A stretch of 64,000 nt of DNA from positions 3,412-67,411 of the forward strand of contig CDMY01000489.1 in the NCBI GenBank assembly GCA_001179505.1. The letters are read 5' to 3'. How positions within the stretch are numbered: position 1 is the stretch's first letter; each line of letters begins with the position of its first letter. The notes under the pieces were generated by a model, which searched no databases, was not told where the DNA came from, and saw only the letters and a program-made list of their open reading frames with translations. Positions 34,560 to 54,206 of this stretch are shown here, piece by piece. The position numbers and the translations under genes were made by a program. Source of the stretch: Vitrella brassicaformis CCMP3155. Taxonomy: Eukaryota > Protista > Chromerida.

Positions 34560-36500
34560 TATGATACATGATAGTGTATGCATTGCACTCACAGATGCGT
34601 GCATTCCTCCAGTGCACGGCGCCATCTGAAGGCGCTGATACGCCGACGCTCACTGGTGTCACATGCCTCCTCACCCCCCTGATCTGCTCTCACAGACCGC
34701 TGGTCTGCTGGCTGCTCTTTCTGTGTCTCGCTGCTTGGTCCTGCCAGGCTCGCCAGTCGCCTCAAAAAGACCACTAAGTACATCTGGACTGCCTCAGGAG
34801 TCAGACAATGCCTGCAAGAAACTCACACGTAGAGAAGCAAGACGAACCATTTACTTGTCCTGATCCGTCATGTATTCGTCCTGTCACCATGCGAACAGGT
34901 GTCCTGCCTTGGCCATGCGCGAAGCCACATGATCGTTCTGGCGAAGCCATTGCACTTTTTCCTGCAGGTCTTGGGCGGTGATGAAAGGGACCAGCAAGGG
35001 CTTCAGGAGAGGGTCGAAGAATTGAGCGGCCTCCGTTCCACGAGACGACTGGAAGATAACAGCCCCGGACAAGAGCAGTAGACGCAGCCTCACGCTCCAG
35101 GGGCCATGCTGAACGACATATGGAGGATCAAGAGCATCGAGCTGTCTCACCAGGAGGGACAGCCGGCCCGCCGAAAGCAAACCACGTGTGTGTGCGTATG
35201 TGCGTACCCCAGGCATGTCGAGGAGGTACTTGGCATTCATCATACCCTTCTGCCACTCATCAAAGCCAGTTGCATTCTCGCGGCAGATGTGCGATGCATC
35301 GCAGCCATACTTGCTGAAACAAACAACCCCAATACGCACCGAGCAGACGCCTGTCGCTGCATTCGGTCGCGTACGTACTTCTGAAGCTCATTTGCTGCTT
35401 CCACACAATCCAATGATGGCTTCCTCCGCGCGTCCGTTACATATACGTGTTCCGACATGCGCCGATCAAGCAGCCGCAGCTTACACGCCAGCTCCAACCG
35501 CGCCTTGTCCGTATACCGACCGATGAAGAACAGATCGCCGTCTTTCGCGTCCCACATGTCCTCCCAGCTCTGGTCGCTGAGTTGCCCCCCGCCCCTGTAG
35601 AGTGACCTCCATAGAAGCCGCCGCGTCGACTTCTCTTCCTTGTTACCGAATCCCGTAGTGGGGTTTATGTAGGGCTGGCCAGGCACGTCCCAGGAGAAGG
35701 CGCGGAAGGAAGACGTCGAAACGAGCAAGCCGGGCGGAGCAGATGTCATGTTGTGTCTGGGATGGAGAGCAAACGGCCGCCCACCGGTCTCTTCTTCTCC
35801 ATGCTGGCAGAAGTCGTGGAAGGGGACAAGAGAATGCCTGCGGAAAGGACACACGTGCGTCAGCCAGCCAGTAGACGTGCCTTCCCCATTGACTTACCAC
35901 ATCAGCGGACAGTCGTCAGCGCTCAGCGTCAGGTGCACGTCATTCGAAAAAGCAACTTGACGAGCAGCGTGCTTTGCAGCATCAGCAAGGGCGCGAACAT
36001 AGTGCTGTGACCACAGAGGATTGTGGTTGCGCTTCCACCGCGGCTGACACTTCCCCAGCGGGTGGCAATAGAGTGTCCCATCAGGTGCAGACACGCTCAG
36101 CCTCACAGGTGGTAGATCGAAATACGGCATCTTCACGGCGTTGTCAGCCACAGTCGATAAGTCCACATGATGATTGCTGAGCGCCTTGAGGGTATCACTC
36201 GTGTCCAGCGTCTCCTCCCACCACCTCTCGCAATGGTTGCCCAGGAGGTCATCAGCGTGCAGGCGGCCAATCAAGGCGTCCAGGGCCATCACGTTGATGG
36301 CATCTGCTGCCGTTCTCTCGGGTGTGACCTGTCGGAAGATGGATGAGAAAACGCGGGTGCCTCGGTCAACAGAGAGACTTTGGAAGACCAGGATGGCGAC
36401 ACCAAGACATGGGATGCCCAAAAGAAGGCGGCCCGACACCATAGTCGGAGGGAAGTTGCTGATGAATCCTACAGTGTACTGGTGACCGTTGCGGCATTCC
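34560..36500 (-). CDS. Glycosyltransferase family 90 (CAP10/KDELC/POGLUT-like), type II membrane protein
   Basis: N-terminal TM segment LLLGIPCLGVAILVF; LTLSADDCP; LLWRSLY; KYLLDMPG...WSVRLRLLLLSGAVIFQ...QFFDPLLKP..VP...DLQEKVQWLRQNDHVASRMAKAG. Both ends are approximate. Confidence 0.85.
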
Positions 36501-37730: not shown

Positions 37731-40700
37731 CTATCTCCGACTGCCGCCGTCGCATTCCTTCGGCCCGCTGACGACCCTCATCTCGCCGTCAGCCCGCTCA
37801 ACGACCTCCTGCTCTTCCTTTTTCAAGTGGCAGGTGCGCTCGAGGCCGTAGAAGGACCAGTGCTGGCACTGTGAGTGCTGCAGACACAGATGTTGGCACA
37901 GCTGGGCGCTCCGCACGTCAGCCAGGGAGAGGATGTCGCCGCCGACGTATTCCACACCTTTCAGGAAACAACCTGCACAGGATAGGTAGGACAGAAAGGA
38001 GACACACAGATGTCTCGTCGCTGTCTATGCGGAGAGCATCTACCTGCTCACCCACCCACACCCCCACACACCTGTCTCTTCTTCCTCCCCTTCTAGTGCA
38101 CTGTCTCCCTCTCCACCCAACGGGTCCTCTGGGTCGTTTTGTTGTTCCTCAGGTGACACCACCTCTTCCCTGCTGCTGCTGCTGCTCCTGTCAGAGGTGA
38201 CCTTGTCGCACTCCCTCTTGCCGCTGATGACCGTCGCCGTGCCGGCAGGGCTCCTCGAGTCCACAGACGACCACAGCACACACGTTTGGTCGCCCACAGG
38301 AAAGCGGTACTCGTATGCCACACACCCGTCCCTCTCTCTGCAGGCCGTTATGCAATCGCTGGGCGAGCTGATGGGCGTGAGTGTGTCCAGGATCTCGCCC
38401 GTAATTGCCGTTGCAATGTCGTAGCACCGCTGGCACGTGTGGTCGGGCGTGAGGTGCAGCCCGTCGGCACACTCTCGGCACACGGGGGCGTCCTTCTCCA
38501 CTCCTGCGGGAGGCTCCACTCCTGAGTGGTCGGCGCATTTGTGGCAGTCGTCGAGTGTGCATGGAAGGCACTGCCCGGCGTCCGACGAGAGGTAGTGGCC
38601 CCTGGCGCACCTCGTGCACGTGCCGTTCCTTGACGCCAGCGTAGACACACTGCCGGCGTCACACTTGACACAATTCTCAATTGGACACGCTGAGACACAC
38701 AACACAGACCATGTGTGTGTTGTGTTGTGTTGGTCCAGGGGCGTGGCGTACCCTGGCACATGCCGAATCCGTCTTGGTCGACCAGCACGTACCCCTCCAT
38801 GCACCGCCGGCACTCCCCTCTGCGACCACACCGCTCGCACCCCACACTGTCGCACAGCATGCACCGCCCGTCGCCCCCCAGATACATGCCGGCGGGACAC
38901 GGCGACCCGTCGGTGCTGAGCGGCAGCAGGTCGATGCGGAAGGCGGCCGTCAGCAGCACCGATGTGTCGTCGTCGAAGATGACCGTCAGGTCGAACACAT
39001 GGGGGGGAGGGGGGAGCAGAGACGCCGGCATGGGCGGCAGGATGGCGTCGATCGTCGTCTCCTGCAGACAGACACCACGATTAATGCGGCCATACACAGA
39101 CGTGTAGGCATCTATCTCTTCCTGTTTGTTGTCCTTGCTCACTTACCGTGCAGTCGACCAGCCTGGCGGGACGGGAGCCGACCTTGACCTGCCGGACGCC
39201 CCCCCTGCCGTTAAGGCCCGCCCCACCGACCCGCAGATGATGGCTGACGTCCACCCGGCCCCTCCACGGCCACACGTCGTACAAGACAGGCACTGACACA
39301 TCCTCGTCTCCACTTCGGTCAATGGCACGCGGCTTCGGCGTCAGCACCTCCACTCGAGACTTGTTCTTGTCGACACCGATGATGCGGCAGCCGGGGCCGT
39401 ATGCGAGTGAGTCGAAGTGCGTGTTGAGCCCCCATCGCGGCTGCCTGGTGTCCTTTGCACGTGTGTGGACCACCAGGAGGCCGCCGAAGTCCTCGTTGAC
39501 ATAGGACGCGATCAGGCGGCCCCTGAGCTGCCCGTCGAAACAGCTGCCCATGACCTCCGTCAGGCCGCTGATGCCCCGGGTGGTGGTAAAGCAGTGGCCG
39601 CCCAGCATCTCCTCGTCATCCTCCCCCACAGATGTGTCGGCCTTCTTCTGACCTCGGGCGCTGTTCGGCGCGCCCCAATGAGAGCCCTTGGCCAGCGGTC
39701 CAGCCACGCAATCGGACGTCGGCGGAGTCACCTGCAGCGGCTGTGGGCAGCTGGGAAGCGTGCATTCTGTTTCCATGGCCATGCCACCGTTGTCGGTGAT
39801 GCCACCAGCAGCCACCCACAGCTGCCCCTGTGTCGTCCAGACGAGCTGCCGCGGCGAGCGGAAGCCCGATGCGTGAACGTCCAGCCACTTGGCCGAGTCG
39901 GGGGCGAGGGCGTGGTTGCTGCCCGCTGATTGGTCGTAGGAGGGGACGGGAGACTCGGTCTTCTGATTGATGTAGGCCAGCTGAGTGGTGTTGTGGATGC
40001 GCTTGGCGTGGAGGACGGCTGCCGTGAGGGGCGACTCGGGCAGACACCCTGACGCCTCGGTAGGAATGCCGCCGTTGGTCATACTCGGCTGTTTGTTTTA
40101 AGTGGGGGAGAGGGCAGGAGAACAGACAGGCTGTGCAGGTGGGTGCTGAGTGTCTGTCTCCTGGTTGGTACTCACTCACCTGAGATATGTATAGGTCTCC
40201 GTTGAAGTCGAAGGCCAGGTGGTTGGTCTGCTCCCCCCCGTTGGCCAGAGGCAGACGCTCGGTGAATGGACGCACATCGTCAAACGTGGGCCACCCTGCG
40301 CACACCACACACCACACTCCGCTTATCCCATGCCCCCGCCGACCGGATTCCCCACCTCTGAGCTCAGAAATGGTTGAGTTGTAAGGCAGCAGCTGCCCCT
40401 CCTTGAGGTAGCCGCAGCCCTCGCCGTAGAGCTGCAGCACACTGTGCGAGACCAGCAGCCGGGGGCCGGAGGACTCGTCGGCATAGGGGTCGAAAGTCAG
40501 GCCCATGATGGAGTGGCCCAGGCCGTAGGTCTGGGTGATTGACGCGATTCTGCGGACCTCCTTTGCTGGCTCAGATGCGTTGGCAGGGAATGAGAACACC
40601 TGATCGGCACGTGGTGCAGACACGTGGGGTAAATAAGGATGTCTCTGTGTGTGTGTGTGTGTGTGTGTTTGGGGGGGGGGGGGGGGNNNNNNNNNNNNNN

Positions 40701-43061
40701 NNNNNNNNNNNNNNNNNNNNNNNNNNNNNNNNNNNNNNNNNNNNNNNNNNNNNNNNNNNNNNNNNNNNNNNNNNNNNNNNNNNNNNNNNNNNNNNNNNNN
40801 NNNNNNNNNNNNNNNNNNNNNNNNNNNNNNNNNNNNNNNNNNNNNNNNNNNNNNNNNNNNNNNNNNNNNNNNNNNNNNNNNNNNNNNNNNNNNNNNNNNN
40901 NNNNNNNNNNNNNNNNNNNNNNNNNNNNNNNNNNNNNNNNNNNNNNNNNNNNNNNNNNNNNNNNNNNNNNNNNNNNNNNNNNNNNNTTTGGGGGGGGGGG
41001 GGGGGTCGCTCCCCACTCACGAACAAGCTCACTCACATGGAGATGCCCCGTAAGGGAACCGACGTAGAGGAGCTGGTCGGGCCCCCAGACGGTGACAGTG
41101 GGGTGGTCCACCTGTGCCACCACCCTCCTGTCGAATGCGACGGGGCCTTTGCCCCTCTCGCCCTCGTACACGAACATCTTCTTGTTGGACCCGCCTCGCT
41201 GCGTCTCCACCCACACATTCACCTCCTTGACACTCGGCTCGTGCCAAGGCGGCACCTCCACCTCCACATACGAGTCGGGCATCTCGCTCACCTCCGCCGC
41301 AACCGCACTGTCGTCGTCAAAATGCACCAAGATGGTGTTCTCGCCCTTCTGCTGCGGGGTGAGCATCCCCCGGCCGTGGATGCGTATGACTGTCTTGGTG
41401 CGGCCGACATTGGGCTCTATATGGTTGATGAAGGGACGGGGCAGGAATGCGGTCTCATTGCGGAAGAAGGCCAGTGGCGCGGGGGTGAGTGATGGCGTGA
41501 GGGGGGAGGTGGCGGGGAAGAACTGCAGCGAGAGGGGGTCGGTTGGGGGATGCTGGAGGGAGAAGCGCACGTCGAACAGCTGCCGCGAGTTGCTGTGCGG
41601 CGAGATGACCAGGTTCTGAGTCAGGTTGTGGACGTGGCCGTTGATGTGGAGCGACGTGAACTTCAAAGGGTGCGTCGTCGTGATCGATATGGGCTCTCGC
41701 TTGTCCAGCACACCTGCAAACAAACAAAAACCAGCAACGCCCATACATTTTCCAGCCACAAGCTCAATCAGCTGACCCTTTGAGGCTCTGAAGTCCAGGT
41801 ATCCGATCAGCCGCACCAGGCACCCCCTCCCATACGCACTGTCCCCCACCCACCCGTTGCGCGCATCGATGGCCATGCCGTCGCGCCGGCCCACTCCCAC
41901 CCACGACGGCACGTTGGGCAGCTCCTCAACAGGCGCCGACTGCCACCTCTCCAGCAGCTCCATGTGGGTGCCACTGTCGTACAGAAACACCTGCACCCCA
42001 GGGAGGCGATCGATGGGCGCCACAGTGACGGATTTCTTGGCTGTGACGGTCTTGTTGGCGGAGCCGTTGGCAGACGACGTCACGGTGAGGGAGAGGGTGT
42101 GCTTGCCGACGGGCAGGGCGATGCCTTTCTCAGAATGGGGGCCCTCGTAGAGAACGGTCTCTTCGGCTGTCCTGTGTGTGGTCAGTTCCCACTTGTACTT
42201 GACGCCCTTGACTGTCGGCCGGAAGGCTTGGGCCGAGCTGGTGCATTCAGAGGAGCCGTCTGGGCAGGGCTTGGTGGGCTTGGTGGGCTTGGTGGGTGTT
42301 GGCTGCGGCAGCTGCAGGTTCCAGCTGAGAGGTGCCCGGGCGTCGAGCATGACAGATACCGCACCGTCGCCATTGTAGTCAGGCAACACCTGCAACACGA
42401 ACAAGGCCATCCCCCCGCCCATTCCTCCTTCCTCTCTCCCTTGTGCTGTGCTTACCTCCGGCACATAGATCATGGCCTTCTCCGGCCCTCCCCCCCTCAG
42501 TCGCTCCTCCACCCCGTTGATAACCCGCATCAGCTCCGTTTCATCTGGCTCGACCTGCTTCAGCCCCCACCACCCCAGCCGCTCCAGCAGTGCAGCGGCG
42601 ATGGGCGCGTCCAGCCGCTCAAAGATGCGTCGGATGCCCAGCGTGCGGAGGAACTCGAGAGTCGACTCGAACGAGTACGTGTCCTGGCTGTAGGTCGTCT
42701 GCGCACCCTCTACGTCGGCCTCCAGTGCGGTGATGGCCGGCATCGACGACACGTCAGGGTGCCGCAGGAGAGAGAACAGCAGCGACGGCGGGAAGGCCAT
42801 CTTGTGACCACCACCAGAGGAGCCGTCGGACATTGTCGCATTGGCTGTCGTGCCTGACACGACAAGCAGAAGGAACGTCAGTCACGAGCCAACTCTGTCT
42901 GAACAGCAGCAGTGTTCTTTCTGCCTGCCTTACACACCTTCTGCCAGCCTTTGCTGTTCGTCGAGAGAGGCCCTGAGCATGGCAATCTCCTGGGCGGCGG
43001 CCCGGAGAGCGTCAACGGCCGCGATGGTCCACAGGCACAAAGACGGGACAAACCGCACCAT
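37731..43061 (-). CDS. Large secreted multidomain protein: signal peptide, Ig/PKD-like, PA14-like, IPT/TIG, glucose/sorbosone-dehydrogenase-like beta-propeller, second TIG-like, CxxC furin-like repeats, two PAN/Apple domains
   Basis: MVRFVPSLCLWTIAAVDA leader; LPVGKHTLSLTVT (PKD-like); PFINHIEPNVGRTKTVIRIHGRG (TIG); PTVTVWGPDQLLYVG, LAFDFNGDLYI and HASGFRSPRQLVWTTQGQLWV (propeller); CxxC-rich block; SAQLCQHLCLQHSQCQHWSFY...CHLK...SGPKEC (Apple). The PKD and PA14 calls are weaker than the others. Confidence 0.8.
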
Positions 43062-43604
43062 TTTGCAGGAAAAACGTCACCGTGCCGTGCGTGCGGCAAG
43101 CAGAACCTAGCGGTTTTCTCCCGAGCAGAAACAATAGTCCAATGGATGGTTTGGCCGGCCGGGATAATCTGGCCGGTAGGGTTTGGCCGTTGTAGTGTTG
43201 TATACAGTGCCTCTCCCCGCGGGGCCAACCAACCAACCAAGGGCGCCAAAAGGGGCTGCGGGCGTATATATATAAGTATACACTTCTGTAGTGTATAGCT
43301 CCCTCTCTCTACCTGCCGCCCCTCCCCATCTCCGCTCGACTGGCGCCGCCTTGCTGCTGCTCGCTGTGTGACGGCAACACGCTTCCCTCCTCCCACGCGC
43401 TGCAGCCAAGAGAAAAGGCCCGTCGAAGTTTCCCTACTTCTCTACCCGCCCCGCCCCGCCCCGACAGCCCGCCCGCCCGTGCGTGTATGCCTCTACACTT
43501 GTGTTGACTGACGTACGAGGCTCCGCTGAGTGGTGCCTGAGGTGAGCCCCGCCCGCACTGCTCCAGCCCCGCCCCTCCCCGGCCGGCACACGAGAGAGAG
43601 AGAG
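43062..43604. promoter_or_regulatory. About 540-bp divergent intergenic region shared by the secreted protein and the glucan synthase
   Basis: Head-to-head ATGs at 43061 (-) and 43605 (+). Contains a TATATATAA stretch at about 43266 and GC-box-like ccccgccc repeats. Confidence 0.5.
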
Positions 43605-46600
43605 ATGGCGCAGAGGACGTCCGTGCCGGCGCCTTCCTGGCTGACGTGGCCCGAGGAGGACACGAGCAAGAAGAACTTCATCGACGTCATCGAGGGCCGC
43701 CTCATCAGCGACGGCCTCCCCACCATCCGCAGCAACCCCGACTCGCCACTCACAACCTTCGACGACGAGCGGTCCACTGACCCCGTTGTCGTCAGCACCT
43801 CGCCCCGCGGCAAGGCCGATGACGCCGGGCAGCTGCTCGAGTACGAGACCATCATCAGGAACATCCTGCGGCTGTTCCGCACCCCGGGGTCGTCGAGCGG
43901 TCGTGTGGGTGGGTCGCCGACGGTGTTTGAGGAGATGGTGCACAAGTTTCGGTTTCAGGAGGACAACTATTTGAACCAGTACGAGGACGTCGTCTACACC
44001 CTCATCTCAATCGCCCTCCGGGACTACCCCCCCACCAACGAGGTACCCAACGCACTCAATGACCGATGGATGACCACGTTGGTGGTGGGTGGCTGCGAAA
44101 TGGTCTGTCTGTCTGTCTGTCTGTCGTGTGTGGGTGCGATGACTGACTTGACATAATGGCAGACGACGCGTGCGATGCGCGACAGGGGGTTCAGTCGTCT
44201 GGAGGAGTACGCCCTCTACCGCTACCACTGGAAGCTCTTCAAGAACTACCGCAGGTGGTGCCAGTACGTCAACATCAAGCCATTCCCATGGGGAGAGAAC
44301 AAGGCCAAGGCCGGCAAGGGACTCACAGGCGCCGTCGCTGCGTTCGAGAAAGACAAGGAGAAGCAGAGGAAGAACCCAAAGACACTTTTGCGTAAGAAAG
44401 ACAGAAGAGACGCACACAGGAGTCATCATTGCACGTGGTAGACGTGTTTGTGTGCCATTCATTCAGAGCTGATGGCCCGAGAGATAGCGTTGTGGAAGTT
44501 GATGTGGGGCGAGTCGGCGAATCTGCGCCACTGCCCGGAGATGCTGCTGTTCATCTTCCACTGGATGGTCAAGAGCTGGGACGACGTCGACCCCGCCACC
44601 CTGCCCACATTCATCGAGACCATCACGCCCGTCATCAACGAGTTCTGGGAGGAAATGCGGTAGGTAACCGCGTGGGCCGGCCGCAGTGACCACATACACA
44701 CCCACACACGTCGCATATCTGTGTGTGTGTGTGTGTCTATATGTGTGTGTGTCTATTAGGCGTGCTCAAGGCGACCACCCCGTCAAGATGAACTACGAGG
44801 ACTTCAACGAAATATTTCACAAGGCCCCGGTGGTGCAGGAGTATCTGGGGGTGGCGGGGAAGCCCGGCACGGGCGGCGTCTGGCAGGGCAACATCATCAG
44901 GCTCATCAAGGCCGAGTCGCAGACGCATCAGCTCGTCAAGCTGCACCCACCCAAGGGAAGGAAGAAGACGTTCGTCGAGCAGAGGAGCTACCTGCACGTG
45001 AGCCGAATCGGACGCAGAGGCCAGCCAGCGGCCAGTCAGTCGTGCTGACGTGACATACGGTATGTGTGTACGTGTGTGGTGTGTCCCCATCGTACAGTTC
45101 TTCCGCACTTGGTGGCGGTTCTACCACTTCCACCTGGTCAGTCTGCTCATCATCCTCACACTGGGAGCTCGCGCGAGAGGTAACGATCTTAAGATAACTG
45201 ACTGACCCACATAGGCATCCATGGTGTGGACAGACAGGGATATATAATGTTCCTTGGCTTCTCTCCGTCTGTCTGTGATGTGACACCAGGTTGGGACTGG
45301 CAAGGCTGGTGGGGCACTGTGGCGGTCGGCTCGTCTGCGGGGAGCGCCGTGCGGGAGATGCTGGACCTCTTCTTCTACTGGATGGCCCCCGTCCCCCTTC
45401 TGCAGCGGCTGCTTGACGCACAAGAGGGCATGCAGAGAATGAGCTGGTCAGCCAGTGCCCTAGTGCCCTCCTCGTGGTGTGATGTGATGCCTCTGATCTC
45501 ATCCACCCGTTGTGTGTGGTGTTCGTGTGCAGGTGGGCTCGTCAAGGCATGGCTGGCCTGCGGTGGGGCTTCTTCCTGGCCGCCGCGTATGTCAGCCACA
45601 CCAGCCCGAGCGGCCTGGCGGACCCTTTGCTGCAGCCGCAAGGCTACATCGGCGGCGGCTACATGGCCTTCTACCTCCTGCACGGCCTGTCCTACTTCCT
45701 GGTGCGGGCGAGGAAGGCCTTCCCGTGGTGGCGGAGGAGCCCGCCGACCTGGAGCTCTCACGCGACCTTCTCGGGCAACGCGACTATGCTAAGCGACGAA
45801 TACAAACACATGGTGAGGGAGGGAGGGAGGGAGGAGCCAGATTCGTTGAAGATGGATGGCTCTTACTTGTGGGTGTGTGTGTGTGTGTGTGCAGATGGCG
45901 TATGCGTTGTTCTGGGGGCCGATAATCTCGTTCAAGCTGTGGATGGGGTACTACTTCTTCGGCAACGCCTTCCTCGATTACCTCGAGTTCATCGACGCCA
46001 CCGTTGGACAGCCCCTCAAGTACACACAACACACACACACACACACACACACACATAACATAAACACGACGGTGCGATCGATGCACTTGTGTGTGTGTGT
46101 GTGTGTGTGTGTGTGTCGGTGTGTCTGTGTCTGTGTGACCAATGGCCACATCACACAGGTTTGATTTCCTGTGGTTTTCCTTCGATGACAATCGGAAGGT
46201 GACGCTCTACTTCTTCTGGGTCGCGCCGTTCTTCGTGCTCTACTTCTACGACATCATGGTATGGTGTGCGCACACACATTCACCGCACCCCACCGCACCC
46301 CACCCAGAAGGAGCACACAGACGCACTCCGTCTCTGTTTGTACGCGCCTGTGTCTTCTCTCTCTCTGTGGTCACCCACCATTCAGTTTTACTTCTCGGTG
46401 TTCCAATCTGGCGTCAGCTGGCTCATCGGATGGTTCAGAGGGGTATGTGTTTATTCCACAAATCTGGCGACCGTCCATCCATCCATCCGCTGTGTGTCAG
46501 ATTGGCTTCATCACTGACCTCTCGGTCATCCAGAAGGTCTTCCCTCTACTACCAATCCAGGTGGGCACCACCCGCCCTCCCACCCACCCACACACACCAC

Positions 46601-49600
46601 CAAGACCACGAAGACTGACACATGTGTGTGTGTCCTGGCCTGCTTTGCTCGCTGCAGTACGACCGTGTGTTGTCTGACGATGCCGGCGGGTCGATGCGGC
46701 AGCTCAAGCTGCCGACCTCCGCCTCGCCCAACATATCTGGGTGCGGCATCGACTGGCTGCTGCAGCTCACCGCCCGCTACCTTTGCTGCGGACTCTACTC
46801 ACGCAAGTCACGGTCCAAAGTCAAACCCAAATCATACTTCAGGTCAGCCCTATCTGGGAGAGAGGCATCCGTCCATTCCATTCAACGAGTGTGTGTTGTG
46901 TGTACGTCAGGTCTCATTCTCGGCCGAACTACGCCCTCCCCCTGCGCAATACCTCCCGCAGCAGCAGCCGGCAGCCCACCAAGAGCCGGCAGCCGACAGA
47001 CTCGTCCAACACCACCGAGGGCCTCAAGAGGAAACCCAGCCAGTCGTTCGTCCCCCACTCCCGAGACGACGACAGCCTCACCAACGTGCTCATCCGATAC
47101 ATACCCGTCTCGCCGCGGGCGGACCCCCCGGCCCAGGGCAGCTCCACCGCCCCACGCAGAGGCCTGCAGCTGCTCGGCGCACGGACCCCTAGGCAGCAGG
47201 AGACGTCATCCTCCCCGTCCACCGCCCCAGGATCGCCGCACACCGTCCCCAGCGACCGATCGCAGGAGAGCGGGGCCAAGAAGACACTCACGCCGGGGGC
47301 GGTCGACACCGAGAAGGGCTTGGCCAAGGAGAAGAGGGGAAGTGGGTCGACGACGGGTGCGGGTGGTGGTGGGGGGAAGGACGACGTGTCTGGTGGCAAG
47401 AGGGGCGGCAAGAAGGACGGCGAGGGCCGCGGGTGGGTGTCCTGGTGGATACGCGAGATATCGGCCGTGTACGACAACGCCATTCCACCTGAGACGGTCG
47501 AGAACCAAATCAGGAGGTGCGCATGCGTCCCCACCGCACACACATCATGATGGATGCTGTGGGTGGGTTGTCCACTCTCAACCATTTCTCTCTCTCTGCC
47601 TGCCTGCCATCCATCCATCCATCAGGTTTGGCTTTCTGTGGAATGAGGTGGTTGAGTCCTGGCGAGAGGAGGACCTCATCGACAACGCCGAGCGGTGCAA
47701 GCTGCAGTTCAACGAGCTGCCCGCGATCCACTTCAAAGACCTCAAGGCAAGAACACAACACAGAGAGGGAGGGAGGGAGAGAGGGAGGCCACACAAAACA
47801 AGTCAACACCCGCACACACCCTCCCCTCCGTGTTTGTCCTGTCCGCCTGCGTATAGGATTTGAATATGGCGTGTTGCGACGGCGAGGGCAACTCCAACGG
47901 CAGCGTGAGTGTGTCCTGGGACGGCTCGGACATCCGCCACCCGGTGTGGGTGTACTGCGACGTCCTCAAGAGCTTCACCAGAGAATGCGAAGCGCACCAG
48001 ACGCACATCAACGAGATATGGGAAGGCCTGCGGGTCAGCCACCAACCACCCCCACCCTCCACCCCTCCCACACACACACGCGGCTCGTATCGTACTGGGT
48101 GTGGCCACATCAGGACCACTATCGCTCGAGCAACGACTCGCATCAGTACCTGCAGGAGGTGCTGAAGCTGCCGCCCTCAGTGGCCACTCGGGGGCGTTGG
48201 TCAGCGGTGGGTGTCAAGCAGCGTGCCAAGGCGTCGCTCCACCAGACTGGCAAGGACTTCATCACCAAACTTTTTGGCAACTCGAGGGCCACCGTGGCCG
48301 ACCCCCGAGCCGACAGCCACCAATTTTTGCTCCGCACGGCGCTCCTCGAGATCTACGAGGCACTGTGTCTCTACCTCACACGATTCTTCCCCGGCGGCAG
48401 CAACCTCGCGCTTCGTCTCAGCTCGCTTGTGCAGCGGGTCAGTCAGGCCGCACACACATGCACTGCACAGCCATCTGGACCGCCTCGCCGACCCATCGAT
48501 GTGCCCTTCTCCGTGTGTGTGTTGATCGATCAGGTGACCCGTCGTCCTTTTTGTCTGTCCCTGCTCAACCTGGCGGCCATCAAGGACCTCCAGACCACTT
48601 TGGCGGCCGTCTTCGCGGCGGCTCAGGGCGACAATGCGGCCAAGCTTGAGGAGAACGGCGTCAAGCTGCTCAAGGCCCTGCAGAAGGTGGCCCTGCCGGC
48701 CCTCCTGCAGACACGCGGCTCGTCCGTGCTGTCCTCCAAGGGCATGGCGCAGCACTTCCCAGAGCTGGTGGAGTTCCTCGAGGCTGTGGGCGAGACACTT
48801 GCCGTCAGGCAGTCCTTCAAATCGTAAGCCAGCCACCTTTCTGTGCTGTGACACCCACCGTAGTTACCAAGACGCTGCCTGCCCTGCATTGGCTTGCGGC
48901 GTGTCATGGTCTCCCTCAGGGTGGTCAATGCCTCCGATCCTGACGCTACGGGTCACTCGGACGTGGGCGGCGTGAGCGAGGCCGAGACAGAGCTGGCCGT
49001 GGCCAACCTGATGGAGCGACTGCAGGTAGTCGAGCCGCCCTCACCCGAGGGCCCCCTAACGCCCCGCATGTCATCGGTGGCCCGGCGGCCTAGCAACAGC
49101 ATCACCAGCAGCAGACATGGAGGAGACGACGACACGCCCACATCCAGCTACTCTCAGCTCACAGCCAGGTCCGTTGTGCGCGACCCACGGGGCCCCCCCA
49201 CGCCGCAGCCACAGAGGAGGGGCGTGCGGCCTCCGTTGCCGGTGTCCAAGCTGAGCGGATTCGCCGAAGACGCTGAGCTTGCGTGGATTGACACGGCTGC
49301 CGAGGCGGGATATTGCGACAAGCTGTGGCGGCTGGAGGAGCTGCAGGAGGGTGTGCGTCTGAACCATCCGCTGAGTCTGTCTGAGGCGCTGAAGCCGTTC
49401 TTCCGCCGGGCCAGCCGCATCCTCACTGCCCAGGGGCACGTTCTCAAGACGGGCCTCGCTCAGGCTAGGTAGGTGTGAAGATAGATTGGCCAGTGACTGA
49501 CTGACTGACTGACACGGAGACACCATCAAAGCCCTCTTCTCTCTGTGTGGTCATCACATCCGTGTTGTGTGTATGTGTGTGTTTTGTGTGTGTGTAGGTT

Positions 49601-50527
49601 GAAGTATTTCTCGAGCTCGCTGTTCATGGAGATGCCCGAGGCGCCCAGCGTGCAGCGGATGGTGTCCATGTGCACCTTCACACCCACATACACGGAAGAC
49701 GCCATGCTCGACTCAACCGTGATCAACACACACACACACACACACCCTCTCCCCCCGACCCGCCAAGCGCACTACTAGATGCCTTTCTCTGTGTCTGTCC
49801 GTGAGCAGATCCTGAACGAGAAGACCATGGAGGGCGTGCGCCAGTTCGACTTCATCCGCACCATGTACAGCCACGAGTGGGCCAACTTCCTGGAGCGAAT
49901 GGACCCACAGGGCGTGCGCTACGAGTGGTACCAACACAGCCAGACACACAAGGGGGTACTCAGCAAAAACATCAACGACATGGCGGCTAAGTAAGTGTAG
50001 TGGGGGAGCTGAGCTGAGCTGTCGACGACACGACCATCGTGGGGCCTGCAAAACAAAATGGGTGTTGGGGTGGTGTGTGTGTGTGTGTGTGTGCGTGTGT
50101 GTTTAGGTTCGAGAAGGACATAGAGGAGTGGGCGTCTGACCGGTCTCAGACGCTGTGGCGCACCCTGAGGTCCGTCATGTACTACGAGCAGGCCTGCAGG
50201 ATGCTGGTCAGTCAGTCAGTCAGTCAGCACAGTAAAACCCACCCCCCCAGCCAACACAGCACAGCACAGCGCACATCCCCTCCCTCTGTGTGTGTGCTTG
50301 GATTGGATTGGATTGTGGTTTAAACAAACGTTCAGGCGTGGATGGAGTTGCAGGAGCAGCGAGGCGAGGCGGTGCACCTGTGCCACGACCGCAACATGCT
50401 CTCCTTCGAGCAGAACGAGCGGCTCAACTGGCAGAAGGTCCCCATTCAGCCCGACAGCCCCAAGAAACTCCAAGGTGACTGACGCCACTCCAACTGCCTC
50501 AGGGGGCCTATCCATTTATCAGCTCGG

Positions 50528-50563
<36 letters not shown>

Positions 50564-53027
50564 TGTCGTGTGTGTATCTAAAGTGTTCCTGCGTCACTGG
50601 GAGCGGTGTCGGTCTCGCAAGAGAGTCCTCGACTTCAGACCCTACGACAACGACCCCGTCGCAAAGGTGAGCACAGTGCTGTCTGCCCCTGACCCTCGTC
50701 CGTTGATTCATCTTCCTGTGCATCTCTCTCTCTCGACAGGCCCTGGCGACTCTCCGCTACCACTACGTGCTCACCGCCCAGACACTCGGCGATGACATGA
50801 AAGCGCCGCCGAGCAACCGTGTGGCCAGCCTGCGTGTCCGCTGCATCACCGAGATGTGCAAGCGCTTCCCCAACCTGCGTGTGGCGGCCATCGAGAGCTG
50901 CGACGTCACTTTGCCCGGCTCCGGGCCCCCATCCTCATCGACGGAGTTGGTCAAGTGGTCGCCGAGCAAGGAGACCTCGCCGCCCCCGCCCGGCAAGACC
51001 AAGACGGTTCGGTGCTCCGTCTTGTACAAGTGGGACGTCAGCCAGCAGCGGCTGGTGCGGGTGTATAGGATCGTGCTGGGGCTGCTCGAGGGCACATCGG
51101 GGGCCAAGTGAGTAGCGAGACAGACGACACTCATTGAATCGACCACATGGATGGATTGACACATGGGATGGGTGGTTGTGTGTGGTGTGTGCAGGAATCC
51201 CATTGTGGGAGAGGGCAAGAGCGAGAATCAGAACCATGCTGTCATCTTCACACGGGGCGAGACCGTCCAGGCCATCGACATGAACCAGGAGATGTACCTC
51301 GAGGAGGCACTCAAGCTGCGCAACCTCCTGCAGGAGTTCGCAAAGGACTCCAACATGGCCATCGTCGGCTTCCGCGAGCACGCCTTCCTCCCGGCCGCTG
51401 TGGCGCCCTCGTACCTGTCCAACATCTCGCAGACCCTCTTCACGGCATTCGACGCGCGCGCCTTCCACATGCCGATGCGTGTGCGGTTCCACTACGGCCA
51501 CCCTGACGTGTTGGACAGGTACCTGGTGCAGACGATCGGCGGCATGAGCAGGGGCAGCGCCATTATCAACGTCACGGAAGACGTCTACTGCGGCATGAAC
51601 TACGTGCAGAGGGGGTACTCGGTTTCACAGGTCGACTACATCATGGTAAGGAGAGAAGAGACACCCACCCAACAGCACCACCACACATGGATTGGATGCC
51701 CCCTCGCCCCCTCTTTGTCTGAGTGCAGTGCTCGAAGGGCTGGCCGAACGACCTGGACCAAGTGGTTGCGTTCATGCGCAAGATCTCGTGCGGGCTGTGC
51801 GAGGCGCAGGTGGCCAGCCGCGACGCCTACAGGATGGCCTACGGGTTCGACTTCTTCCGCATGCTGTCGCTGTTCGCCGTCTTCCCGGGGTGGAACATCC
51901 TCAACCCACTGGCACTCTTCGCCATCTGGCTCTTCTGCTACGGAAGGCTCTTCCTGCACGCCTTCATCGGTGAGGGGGGGGACAGACAGACAGACAGACA
52001 GGGAGGGAGCTGAAGAGGGCGAGAGGGGGCCATGTGGTGTGTGTGTGTTTGTATGTGTATTGTGTTGTGTGTGACTCAGCTGCTATCCCTGACGAGATCC
52101 GGCCTCTGGTGGTTGGGATGGACAGTGCTTTGGTGACCATCATGGACAGGATATGGCTCATCCTACTTGGGCTCTTCTACATGAGGTAGGTGAGATGGGC
52201 CAGGCCAGGCCAGGCCACCGGTGCACTGCAGTGAGTGCGGAGGGAGTGTGTTGCCCATCTGTCCACCATGCCTGTGTGTGGTTGGTGTGGTGTGGTGTGT
52301 CAACAACGGCTGCAGGTTCTTTGCTGTGGTTGCTTTGGAGGAGGGTCTCGGCGAGGGCTTCAAGCACATGTGGCAGCACGTCCGATCGCTCTCACTGCTC
52401 CACTACACCTTCTCCGGTATGCATGCCTCCTCGCTCGCCCGCACGCACGTATCACCACACTCACACACACACGAGACAGACGACTTCGATCGATGTCAGT
52501 TGGGACATGGACGAGTGGTTTTGACGAGACGATCCTGTTTGGTCGCGCCAAGTACCAGAATGCTGGTCGCGGGTTCAGCATCAACCACAAGGACCTCATC
52601 CACCTGTGGAAGTCATACTTCTACTCCCACTTCCAAGTCGCTATCGAGCTGCTCCTGCTGCTCTTCTACCTACACGTAAGCTGCGCTGCCCAAGCTGCCC
52701 TCCAGCCATCCACCCGTCCGGCCTGCATTGCAAGCAATGGCGTCTATCACATCACGTCTCGTGTGTGTCCGCGTGTGTTGTGTTGTGTTGTGTGTGCAGT
52801 TTCTGCAGGACATGCATCCTGTGATCGGGATGCACGTGTGGTGGCTGTGGTTTGTGGTGGTGTCGTTCCTGTACGTGCCGCACCTCTACAACCCCATGGG
52901 CCTCTCCTGGGGCCACCTCATCTCAGACTTCAGCGCTTGGCAAAACTGGATCAGATCAAAGGTAGGTAGAGAGGTAGCTGGGTAGGTACCTACCTAACCG
53001 AACGCGCCAAAGCGGCATCCATCCATC

Positions 53028-53060
<33 letters not shown>

Positions 53061-54206
53061 TGTGTGTGTCAGAACAAGCATGACCCCAACGAGAGCTGGT
53101 ACGCCTGGTGGCGCGCACAGATGGAGTTCCGCAACGGCGCCGCCCCATTCAACAAGGTCGTCATCTTCATACGACAGTGGAGATTCATGCTCCTGGGGCT
53201 CTGCTTCGCCGAGGCCGCACACTGGTACGGTACACACACAGCAGAGAGGCCATCCCTGCAGGGCCTGCAGAGACCACCGCTGTGCTGTGCTGTGCTGTGC
53301 TGTGCCGTGTGTGTAGGGAGTGGCACCACATTCTGGCGTCGCCGAGCATGATCCAGGGCAAGCTGACGGTGCCGACGTGGGAGGGGGCGTGGGAGATGGT
53401 GCAGCAGAGCCCCCTGCTGGCCCCAGTCATCTTCGTGATCCTGCTGATAGTCTCCATGGCACTCTCCACTCACAACCGGGACCACCACCCCAAGTTCTAC
53501 AATCCCAAAGACACACGCGTACGCTGCTCACCCACCCAAGCCCGCCACACCACACACACTCACCTCTCTCTCTCTCTCTCTCTCTCTGGCACACCTGCAG
53601 CATGGTCTGATGTCATTGATGTCGAGCACGGCCAATCGTCTGGTCTCCCTGATCGTGCGTGTGGTTTGTCTTGTCCTGGTGGGGCTGTTCCTCTACTTCC
53701 TCATTGGCGGTGAGGGCCACGGCCTGGCCTTCGGCACCGTCGTCGGCGGCATGGTGGCCTGCCTGCTCGCCTTCTTCTGTGTGGCCAACCTGCTGGCCGA
53801 GTGCTTCGGCGTCCTCGAGTGGCCGGTGGTCGTCGAGACCATCCGGCTGTGGCACTTTGTGCTGGGCATCGCGGGCACCAGCCCGCTCATCGCACTCGCC
53901 GCCCTCAAGTACCTATTCAACAGCAGCGAGCTGCAGATGTACTACCTCCTCAACTCGTACGGCGTCCGGCGGTCGCTGCTGCACATGGGGCACGTCGGCA
54001 AGATGCTGCACAAGATCCGCAGGGAGCAGAAACACCCATACGCCTACAACAGTAAGACGCAGGGCACGACGGCCAGGAGGGGCGGGCCTGGGCAGCAGGC
54101 CGCACTGCCTGACCATGACGATCACGACGCCATTGCCGACCACCAGCAGAGGGGGGCGGCTGACGAGCAGGGGGGCACTCTGCCTGCTTTTGGGAAGCAG
54201 CTGTAG
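43605..54206 (+). CDS. FKS: 1,3-beta-glucan (callose) synthase, GT48/FKS family, many exons
   Basis: FKS1 domain-1 IALWKLMWGESANLRHCPEML; KYFSSSLFMEMP; WASDRSQTLWRT; GEGKSENQNHAVIFTRGETVQAIDMNQEMYLEEALKLRNLLQEF; RVRFHYGHPDV; NVTEDVY; DFFRMLS; RAKYQNAGRGF; LYNPMG; multiple TM segments. Confidence 0.97.

What the first reader, a model, noticed from the sequence alone, without database searches (positions are those of the whole stretch)
37731..43061. Chimeric secreted protein: TIG-flanked GSDH-like beta-propeller joined to apicomplexan-style Apple/PAN adhesin domains
Seen: signal peptide, Ig/PKD-like and PA14-like segments, TIG, a propeller with WGPDQLLYVG / FDFNGDLYI / ASGFRSP blades, a second TIG-like segment, CxxC repeats and two Apple domains. 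Established: Apple/PAN domains are carbohydrate- or protein-binding modules of microneme adhesins such as MIC4, and GSDH-type propellers are sugar oxidoreductase folds common in bacteria. Inference from recollection, not a search: the TIG-propeller-TIG core resembles bacterial and red-algal proteins, so it may be a horizontal or endosymbiotic acquisition fused to host adhesin domains. I do not know this architecture from any described protein.
Basis: partly seen in the sequence, partly recalled or inferred. Interest (0 to 1): 0.75.

Follow-up and report, generated by a model that had tools for sequence, protein, structure and literature searches.

The report
Bacterial-type propeller fused to Apple domains
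A gene of the alga Vitrella, a free-living cousin of malaria parasites, encodes a secreted protein that joins a five-part sugar-handling block of bacterial type, whose enzyme centre is lost, to two 'Apple' sticking modules; it is one of about fifteen such genes here, catalogued but unstudied.

Summary
The stretch is one 10-exon minus-strand gene of Vitrella brassicaformis. It is already deposited as CEM17503.1 / UniProt A0A0G4FS69, "Apple domain-containing protein", 1427 aa. The N gap lies inside intron 4 and removes no coding sequence.

Domain order: signal peptide, unassigned N-terminal region, Ig/PKD-like, PA14, TIG, six-bladed GSDH-type propeller, TIG, CxxC-rich repeats, Apple, acidic linker, Apple.

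The PKD-PA14-TIG-propeller-TIG block is collinear with a bacterial family found in Planctomycetota, filamentous cyanobacteria, Acidobacteriota, Myxococcota and others. The only eukaryotic relatives found were Vitrella paralogues and one Piridium transcript. On one exon these form a single clade against the bacteria sampled. Bacterial origin is likely, but the donor is unresolved and a cyanobacterial sister is not rejected (AU p 0.38). Red-algal kinship was not seen.

The gene is not unique. The genome has at least 15 propeller loci, several with Apple exons on the same strand. The scan's first readers noted four similar mosaics elsewhere in this genome.

In this gene the histidine aligned to the catalytic base of PQQ glucose dehydrogenase is glutamate. 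Three Vitrella paralogues and the Piridium protein have also lost it. I read the gene as a non-catalytic, secreted glycan-binding or matrix protein. That function is inferred, not shown.

The parts
37731..43061 (-). Whole gene: 10 exons, 9 introns, 1427 codons plus stop. Equals CEM17503.1 / A0A0G4FS69. Exons, within about 3 nt: 43061-42935, 42853-42453, 42386-41775, 41711-41037, 40599-40354, 40295-40180, 40088-39147, 39061-38752, 38692-38070, 37970-37731.
43005..43061 (-). Probable signal peptide, aa 1-19
   Evidence: Read from the sequence; no predictor was run
42228..43004 (-). N-terminal region, aa 20-228, including a Pro/Thr/Lys linker. No family found and low model confidence. Not shared with any relative.
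42021..42227 (-). Ig/PKD-like domain, aa 229-297
41448..42020 (-). PA14-fold domain, aa 298-467, interrupted by intron 3 (41774-41712)
41157..41441 (-). IPT/TIG domain 1, aa 470-564
39291..41156 (-). GSDH-type beta-propeller, aa 565-990, spread over exons 4-7
40600..41036 (-). Intron 4, which contains the assembly gap 40687-40986. GT donor, AG acceptor, phase 0 on both sides, poly-C and CA repeats at the gap edges.
40231..40233 (-). Codon of Glu707. This position aligns to the invariant His of the bacterial family and to catalytic His144 of soluble glucose dehydrogenase.
39855..39860 (-). Codons of Arg801-Ser802, where the bacterial family has an invariant Arg-Asn. I matched this pair to the Arg228-Asn229 PQQ-binding pair of sGDH by motif and from memory; it was not printed in a tool alignment.
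38921..39290 (-). IPT/TIG domain 2, aa 991-1085, split by intron 7
38427..38905 (-). CxxC-rich repeats, aa 1091-1229. They start in the exon that also ends TIG2 and finish in the exon that also holds Apple 1. No family hit and not shared with relatives.
38208..38426 (-). PAN/Apple domain 1, aa 1230-1302
38070..38207 (-). Ser- and acid-rich linker, aa 1303-1348
37752..37970 (-). PAN/Apple domain 2, aa 1349-1421, followed by a 6-residue tail and the stop codon. No hydrophobic C-terminus.

Best explanation
This is one nuclear, intron-bearing gene of Vitrella brassicaformis for a secreted, soluble mosaic protein.

Its core is PKD-like, PA14, TIG, a six-bladed GSDH-type propeller and a second TIG. 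This core descends as a block from a bacterial extracellular protein family annotated as 'glucose/arabinose dehydrogenase' or malectin-domain proteins. The block entered the Vitrella/Piridium lineage, most likely once, and multiplied to at least 15 loci in Vitrella.

In this gene, and in several paralogues, host-type modules were added after the second TIG: CxxC repeats and two PAN/Apple domains.

In the subclade that holds this gene, the histidine aligned to the general base of PQQ-dependent glucose dehydrogenase is replaced; here it is Glu707. I therefore infer that the propeller no longer oxidises sugars. It would serve as a binding platform beside two lectin-type modules (PA14, Apple). The protein would then act as a multivalent glycan- or protein-binding component of the cell surface, wall or extracellular matrix.

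Shown: gene structure, domain identities, homology to the bacterial family, family size, loss of the histidine.
Inferred: direction of transfer, loss of catalysis, binding or matrix role.
For: One gene:
- Exact mapping of the deposited 1427-aa protein onto 10 exons, with introns of 60-100 nt.
- TIG2 and the first CxxC repeats share exon 8. The last CxxC repeats and Apple 1 share exon 9.
- Paralogue P0004 is collinear from TIG1 through both Apple domains.

Nuclear, not contamination:
- Spliceosomal introns, and GT48 and GT90 genes as neighbours.

GSDH kinship:
- 129 representatives at E<=1e-3 in 1.84 billion proteins, found with exon 7 alone.
- Bacterial relatives hit Pfam GSDH (E 4.6e-9 and 2.5e-7).
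- The family profile hits soluble glucose dehydrogenase 1c9u (E 8e-8).
- hhalign gives probability 100%.
- The exon-7 model (pLDDT 79) matches PQQ sugar dehydrogenases 3a9g, 2g8s and 2ism first.

Block homology:
- PKD, PA14, TIG1, propeller and TIG2 segments each recover the same bacterial proteins in the same order.

Distribution:
- Bacterial loci fall in at least 7 phyla.
- Of 30 representatives looked up, only four Vitrella proteins and one Piridium protein were eukaryotic. A sixth, P0050, matches the Vitrella locus C574.

Phylogeny:
- The Vitrella/Piridium rows form one clade on the propeller tree: SH-aLRT 99 and 98.
- On the last-blade/TIG2 exon, the eight Vitrella/Piridium rows sampled (four His-less, four His-retaining) form one side of a branch at 97.6.

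Histidine:
- It is present in all 28 bacterial rows of the alignment and aligns to His144 of sGDH.
- It is Glu in this gene, Leu/Leu/Leu/Val in P0002, P0003, P0005 and P0004, and kept in 11 other Vitrella loci.
- hhalign gives the same register.
- The Arg-Asn pair is Arg-Ser here.

Lectin modules:
- PA14 fold, Z 8-10; PAN above the Pfam cut-off.
Against: - No transcript or protein data were available, so splicing and secretion are unverified.
- The loss of catalysis rests on alignment alone. His711 lies four residues after the lost position, and Glu707 could in principle act as a base.
- Pfam GSDH does not hit this protein directly, even at E 5.
- This copy has the longest branch in the family (1.6-3.8 substitutions per site), which could also mean relaxed constraint.
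- The tree is unrooted and the donor unresolved. A cyanobacterial sister group is not rejected.
- Searches seeded from this divergent copy recovered as proteins at most one of the 11 His-retaining Vitrella loci (the fragmentary model P0050 at locus C574), so relatives in other eukaryotes may also have been missed.
- Nothing links the protein experimentally to any glycan. Adjacency to the glucan synthase gene is only suggestive.
Confidence: 0.55

Rival explanations
1. The propeller is still an oxidoreductase. It would use another base (Glu707 or His711) and PQQ taken up from associated bacteria, as fungal AA12 enzymes do. The PA14 and Apple modules would target it to a glycan substrate.
For: The propeller keeps 75 of 129 positions that are at least 85% conserved in the bacterial family, including the DxxN/GxP core motifs. 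Eleven Vitrella paralogues keep the histidine and may be active. The protein-atlas leads were all GSDH/TrAA12 clusters. That eukaryotic PQQ enzymes depend on outside PQQ is my own recollection.
Against: The histidine invariant in bacteria, and the Asn of the Arg-Asn pair, are both changed. The whole subclade lost the histidine, to non-basic Leu or Val in the other four members. No PqqC gene was detected in the genome, but the controls for that search also found nothing, so it is inconclusive.
Confidence: 0.12
2. The cassette came through the plastid endosymbiosis (cyanobacterial or red-algal route), not by direct horizontal transfer from another bacterium.
For: Filamentous cyanobacteria are among the richest carriers. 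Forcing chrompodellids and cyanobacteria into one clade costs only 7.7 log-likelihood units, AU p 0.377.
Against: In the free tree the cyanobacteria are a derived clade (SH-aLRT 93), and the eukaryotic branch attaches near Myxococcota and Phycisphaerae rows. No red alga or other plastid-bearing eukaryote was found among the hits that were looked up. Only Vitrella and Piridium carry it.
Confidence: 0.2
3. This copy is a decaying paralogue under relaxed constraint with no specific function.
For: It has the longest branch of the family, has lost catalytic residues, and several other loci carry in-frame stops.
Against: The reading frame is intact over 1427 codons and 10 exons with canonical splice sites. 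The cysteine pattern is kept in both Apple domains, which score above the Pfam cut-off. The PA14, TIG and propeller parts fold with confidence.
Confidence: 0.08
4. Gene-model artefact: the propeller part and the Apple part are two adjacent genes that were wrongly merged.
For: No expression data were available to me. PAN exons are very common in this genome (at least 144 hits), so chance adjacency is conceivable.
Against: Exon 8 encodes both the end of TIG2 and the first CxxC repeats, and exon 9 encodes both CxxC repeats and Apple 1. The introns between them are 62-99 nt, which leaves no room for a promoter. The same order is seen in P0004 and at loci C251, C608 and C275.
Confidence: 0.05

Closest known systems
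Bacterial 'malectin/Kelch - PKD - PA14 - TIG - GSDH - TIG' surface proteins. Examples: Scytonema hofmannii WP_017748947.1, and MAG proteins of Planctomycetota annotated as PQQ-dependent sugar dehydrogenase or glucose/arabinose dehydrogenase.
   Same: The PKD-PA14-TIG-propeller-TIG block is collinear. Identity is about 25-32% over about 500 residues, and hhalign probability is 100%.
   Different: The bacterial proteins carry malectin and/or Kelch modules at the N-terminus, keep the His and Arg-Asn motifs, and have no PAN/Apple domains or CxxC repeats. None has been characterised in the literature I could search.
Vitrella paralogue CEM27649.1 (A0A0G4GDZ1, 1768 aa; P0004) and the other propeller loci of this genome
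   Same: Same order from TIG1 to the two Apple domains. It has also lost the histidine.
   Different: Only 28% identical. It has a different N-terminus and no CxxC block detected. Eleven other loci keep the histidine.
Soluble PQQ glucose dehydrogenase (sGDH, 1c9u) and aldose sugar dehydrogenases (2g8s, 3a9g, 2ism, 3das)
   Same: Six-bladed propeller of the same superfamily by profile (E 8e-8 through the bacterial family) and by fold.
   Different: Those are single-domain enzymes. Here the His144 equivalent is Glu and Arg-Asn is Arg-Ser, and the propeller sits in a nine-module secreted protein.
Hedgehog-interacting protein (HHIP)
   Same: A secreted eukaryotic protein in which a GSDH-type propeller without catalysis serves as a binding platform next to Cys-rich (EGF) repeats. 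It appears among the fold matches (ranks 11-12). This is an analogy of working principle.
   Different: There is no specific sequence kinship, and HHIP has no TIG, PA14 or Apple modules. It is an animal protein of separate origin.
Coccidian microneme Apple/PAN adhesins (EtMIC5 1hky, TgMIC4 4a5v, Sarcocystis SML-2 2yil)
   Same: The second Apple domain matches these best among solved structures (E 3.8e-4, 0.16 and 0.51).
   Different: Those proteins are arrays of Apple domains only. Microneme targeting and galactose binding were not tested here. PAN domains are generally abundant in chromerids (PMC4501334, supplementary domain table).

Membership tests
GSDH / PQQ-dependent sugar dehydrogenase superfamily (Pfam PF07995) | Direct match to the family model above the curated cut-off | tested here: not met
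   No PF07995 hit for P0001 even at E<=5, nor for the exon pieces.
GSDH / PQQ-dependent sugar dehydrogenase superfamily (Pfam PF07995) | Homology by profile, and a six-bladed propeller fold of this type | tested here: met
   hhalign to the bacterial family gives probability 100%, E 6e-41. Those relatives hit PF07995. The family profile hits sGDH at E 8e-8. The exon-7 model matches 3a9g, 2g8s and 2ism first.
GSDH / PQQ-dependent sugar dehydrogenase superfamily (Pfam PF07995) | Catalytic general-base histidine (His144 of sGDH) | tested here: not met
   Glu707 occupies this position.
GSDH / PQQ-dependent sugar dehydrogenase superfamily (Pfam PF07995) | Arg-Asn pair that binds PQQ (Arg228-Asn229 of sGDH) | tested here: not met
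   Arg801-Ser802. All 28 bacterial rows have Arg-Asn. The equivalence with sGDH residues rests on the shared G-x-R-N motif and my recollection; no tool printed that alignment.
GSDH / PQQ-dependent sugar dehydrogenase superfamily (Pfam PF07995) | PQQ and Ca2+ binding; aldose oxidation | not testable with these tools
   Needs recombinant protein.
IPT/TIG domain (PF01833) | Model match above the cut-off and an E-set Ig-like fold, twice, flanking the propeller | tested here: met
   TIG1 scores 29.2 bits against a cut-off of 20.9 and fold Z 10-12 to EBF, plexin and Met IPT domains. TIG2 is a second Pfam stretch and aligns to the bacterial TIG2.
PA14 domain (PF07691) | Beta-barrel fold of PA14 lectin domains | tested here: met
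   Cea1A Z 10.0 (157 residues aligned), Flo5A 9.3, RTX-adhesin PA14 9.0, MpIBP PA14 8.6, Epa6A 8.0. The model included 21 residues of in-frame intron read-through, which came out as a low-confidence loop.
PA14 domain (PF07691) | Sequence match to the family model; Ca2+/sugar-binding motif | tested here: not met
   No Pfam PA14 hit for P0001. A bacterial relative has only a weak one (E 0.005). The binding motif was not examined.
PKD domain | Model match above the cut-off | tested here: inconclusive
   K319L-like PKD E 0.05-0.14, below the cut-off. Ig-like fold Z about 7.5 to FN3/cytokine-receptor domains. Homologous to the same segment of the bacterial relatives.
PAN/Apple domain (PF00024, PF14295) | Model match above the cut-off with the conserved cysteines, two copies | tested here: met
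   PAN_1 48.1 bits (cut-off 21.4) and PAN_4 46.6 bits (cut-off 27), two stretches each. Both exons are also found in the genome-wide scan. Closest solved chains are EtMIC5 and TgMIC4.
Apicomplexan microneme Apple adhesins (MIC4/MIC5 type) | Protein made essentially of tandem Apple domains, stored in micronemes, binding host glycans | tested here: not met
   The architecture differs: two Apple domains at the end of a 1427-aa mosaic. Localisation and binding cannot be tested here.

The most novel reading that the evidence does not exclude
A whole five-domain extracellular cassette of a bacterial PQQ-type sugar dehydrogenase was captured once by the ancestor of Vitrella and the parasite Piridium. 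It expanded into a multigene family and was repeatedly welded to PAN/Apple modules. One branch, including this gene, became pseudoenzymes that work as lectin-like wall or adhesion proteins. This would be an undescribed route by which the closest algal relatives of Apicomplexa built surface-protein diversity from bacterial parts.
Probability: 0.4. Interest if true: 0.55.

Novelty: new variant of a known kind. Interest (0 to 1): 0.4.

Why it matters
Chromerids are the reference point for how apicomplexan surface and adhesion proteins arose. Three things are shown here. A large, intact multi-domain block of bacterial type sits in nuclear, intron-rich genes. It has multiplied to about fifteen loci. 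It is joined to the Apple modules that coccidian parasites use for host binding.

That gives a concrete, testable example of domain capture and pseudoenzyme evolution in this lineage. The His-retaining and His-less paralogues form a natural pair for testing whether catalysis was traded for binding. For the single gene in question the result is more modest: an already deposited, uncharacterised family member.

Tried and rejected
- Direct family scans (Pfam, NCBIfam) and PDB sequence searches with the propeller exons found nothing.
- The word-indexed protein search with the largest open piece (exons 2-4, read through two in-frame introns) found nothing, because of its length window. With P0001 and P0005 it reached only a few relatives.
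- A PDB profile search with a full-length alignment was swamped by the Kelch and malectin domains of the bacterial rows. I repeated it with short propeller-only proteins.
I folded two pieces by reference instead.
The spliced protein was used only as the database record P0001.
- The piece covering exons 2-4 was read through two in-frame introns. They appear as low-confidence loops.
- The N-terminal region (aa 20-228) stayed unassigned: pLDDT below 50 and no atlas hit.
- The CxxC block has no family hit.
- Foldseek on the multi-domain model gave only generic Ig/TIG matches. VIA-align then resolved the PA14 domain.
- The PqqC search in the genome was uninformative because the controls also failed.
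- No paper mentions the accessions or the bacterial architecture.
- Bacterial contamination was considered and rejected because of the introns and the eukaryotic neighbours.
- Red-algal kinship: no evidence found, but it could not be tested directly.

Full report
**Source and gene model.** The window is scaffold C489 of a 72.7-Mb, 1064-contig assembly. The protein it encodes here is deposited as CEM17503.1 / UniProt A0A0G4FS69, "Apple domain-containing protein", from Vitrella brassicaformis CCMP3155, 1427 aa (P0001). The three minus-strand frames gave me a model by eye. The deposited protein maps exactly onto the window as 10 exons between 43061 and 37731, with introns of 60-100 nt.

Every search with the spliced protein used the database record by its id, and every other search used single exons by reference.

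**The gap.** The N run 40687-40986 lies between a GT donor at 41036 and an AG acceptor at 40601-40600. Both junctions are in phase 0. The run is bordered by poly-C and CA repeats, which probably stopped the sequencing. Across the junction the bacterial family aligns without a missing block, and the Vitrella paralogue P0004 differs only by a 6-residue indel. No coding sequence is hidden in the gap.

**Domains.**
- Pfam places TIG at aa 472-559 and two PAN/Apple domains at about aa 1230-1302 and 1349-1421, above the curated cut-offs.
- The Ig/PKD-like segment has only sub-threshold hits.
- I folded one piece covering exons 2-4, read through two in-frame introns. It has confident structure from aa 229 onward.
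- VIA-align matched its TIG to EBF, plexin and Met IPT domains (Z 10-12).
- It matched aa 298-467 to PA14 lectin domains: Cea1A Z 10.0, Flo5A 9.3, RTX-adhesin PA14 9.0, each with about 150 residues aligned.
- The first 200 residues after the probable signal peptide are of low confidence and match nothing.
- The CxxC repeats are plain in the sequence but hit no family.
- The C-terminus has no hydrophobic tail, so the product should be soluble once secreted.

**The propeller.** Direct scans failed. Exon 7 alone (313 aa) found 129 cluster representatives at E<=1e-3 among 1.84 billion proteins.
- The nearest bacterial relatives hit Pfam GSDH, with malectin, PA14 and two TIG domains around it.
- A profile of short bacterial members hits soluble PQQ glucose dehydrogenase at E 8e-8.
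- hhalign of P0001 against that profile gives probability 100%, E 6e-41, over aa 563-1081.
- The exon-7 model (pLDDT 79) matches PQQ sugar dehydrogenases first.

The GSDH-type reading is therefore correct at superfamily level.

An iterated local search used each P0001 segment against the collected relatives. The PKD-like, PA14, TIG1, propeller and TIG2 segments all recover the same bacterial proteins in the same order. The N-terminal region, the CxxC block and the Apple domains do not.

**Who has it.**
- Named bacterial carriers are mostly Planctomycetota and filamentous cyanobacteria (Calothrix, Rivularia, Nostoc, Tolypothrix, Scytonema, Coleofasciculus).
- Others are Acidobacteriota, Myxococcota, Bdellovibrionota, Sumerlaeota and a gammaproteobacterium.
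- Of 30 representatives looked up, the only eukaryotic ones were four Vitrella proteins and one transcript of Piridium sociabile.
- Piridium is a whelk parasite that branches as sister to Vitrella (bioRxiv 10.1101/636183).
- A sixth representative, P0050, is a fragmentary model of another Vitrella locus.

**A gene family.** A profile search of the genome itself found propeller exons on at least 14 contigs, at least 15 loci in all. PAN exons lie on the same strand just downstream at C489 (this gene), C637 (P0004), C251, C608 and C275. They lie about 4-5 kb upstream at C564 and C416. P0004 is collinear with P0001 from TIG1 to both Apple domains.

First readers of this scan noted four similar mosaics on other pieces of the genome. 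PAN itself is very common here, with at least 144 hits. It was already listed as a chromerid extracellular domain in the genome paper (PMC4501334). That paper does not mention GSDH.

**Phylogeny.** On the propeller, P0001, P0002, P0004, P0005 and the Piridium protein form one clade, with SH-aLRT 99 and 98. P0001 is by far the longest branch. On the single exon that encodes the last blade and TIG2, four His-retaining Vitrella loci join them in one clade against the bacteria sampled (97.6). This fits one acquisition followed by expansion.

Piridium is sister to P0005 inside the Vitrella paralogues, so the duplications predate the Vitrella/Piridium split. The cyanobacteria form a derived clade away from the eukaryotic branch. 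Forcing them together is not rejected, however (AU p 0.377). The donor, and the choice between horizontal and endosymbiotic routes, stay open. The direction, bacteria to eukaryote, is inferred from the breadth of the bacterial distribution.

**Catalytic residues.** The bacterial family has an invariant N-H-D-H-G-x-N-G motif. Its second histidine aligns to His144, the general base of sGDH. P0001 reads N-G-G-E-Q-T-N, so Glu707 takes that place. P0002, P0003 and P0005 have Leu, and P0004 has Val. MAFFT and hhalign agree on the register.

Eleven other Vitrella loci keep the histidine. The Arg-Asn that is invariant in bacteria is Arg-Ser here and His-Asn in the four close relatives. P0001 keeps 75 of 129 positions that are at least 85% conserved in bacteria.

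I conclude that this subclade has most likely given up PQQ-type catalysis while keeping the fold. This is an inference from alignment. His711, four residues on, and Glu707 itself are caveats.

**Working model.** The gene encodes a secreted, soluble, multivalent binder. It has two lectin-type modules (PA14, Apple x2) and a propeller used as a platform, spaced by TIG domains and Cys-rich repeats. HHIP in animals is a precedent for a non-catalytic GSDH-type propeller beside Cys-rich repeats.

The gene's start lies about 1.4 kb from the first confirmed domain (FKS1_dom1, 44448-44660) of an oppositely oriented beta-1,3-glucan synthase gene, and possibly only about 0.5 kb from its first open frame (43530, unconfirmed). 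A GT90 gene lies downstream. This makes a role at the wall or in an extracellular glycan matrix attractive, but it is only circumstantial.

**Verdict.** This is a new variant of known kinds of module, of moderate interest mainly at the level of the family.

Noticed in passing
window 43530-54206 (+): A beta-1,3-glucan synthase (GT48) gene runs in the opposite direction to the studied gene. FKS1_dom1 lies at 44448-44660 (E 7.4e-10) and Glucan_synthase at 51163-52071 (E 7.5e-46) and 52235-52966. The two genes are head to head. About 470 bp separate the start of the studied gene (43061) from the first long open frame on the other strand (43530), but that frame had no family hit. This may be a shared promoter region.
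   Followed up: partly
window 34887-35339 (-): An exon with a glycosyltransferase family 90 match (E 1.7e-6) lies downstream of the studied gene. Together with GT48 it forms the possible glycan neighbourhood noted by other first readers.
   Followed up: partly
G000 contigs C776, C574, C275 (two loci), C608, C491, C484, C251, C416, C564, C959: Eleven further Vitrella loci of the same propeller family keep the histidine aligned to the catalytic base (motifs NHDHG.NG, NGDH.., and similar). Several have PAN exons nearby on the same strand. These could be genuine PQQ-type enzymes fused to Apple domains in an alveolate.
   Followed up: partly
G000:C574:14135-14428, C776:2049-2306, C564:28375-28749: Single in-frame stop codons (TAG, TAG, TAA) fall inside propeller exon matches of three paralogous loci. 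At C574 the stop lies two residues before the conserved Asn that opens the His motif (five before the His). These may be pseudogenes or intron edges. The deposited model for C574 (P0050, 346 aa) is only a fragment.
   Followed up: no
whole genome G000: PAN/Apple exons are extremely abundant: at least 144 PAN_1 and 118 PAN_4 matches, often in tandem arrays (for example C347, C573, C324, C464).
   Followed up: no
window 40600-41036: The assembly gap is bordered on both sides by C homopolymers of about 16 bases, and on one side by a CA dinucleotide repeat. This is a likely cause of the sequencing break.
   Followed up: yes
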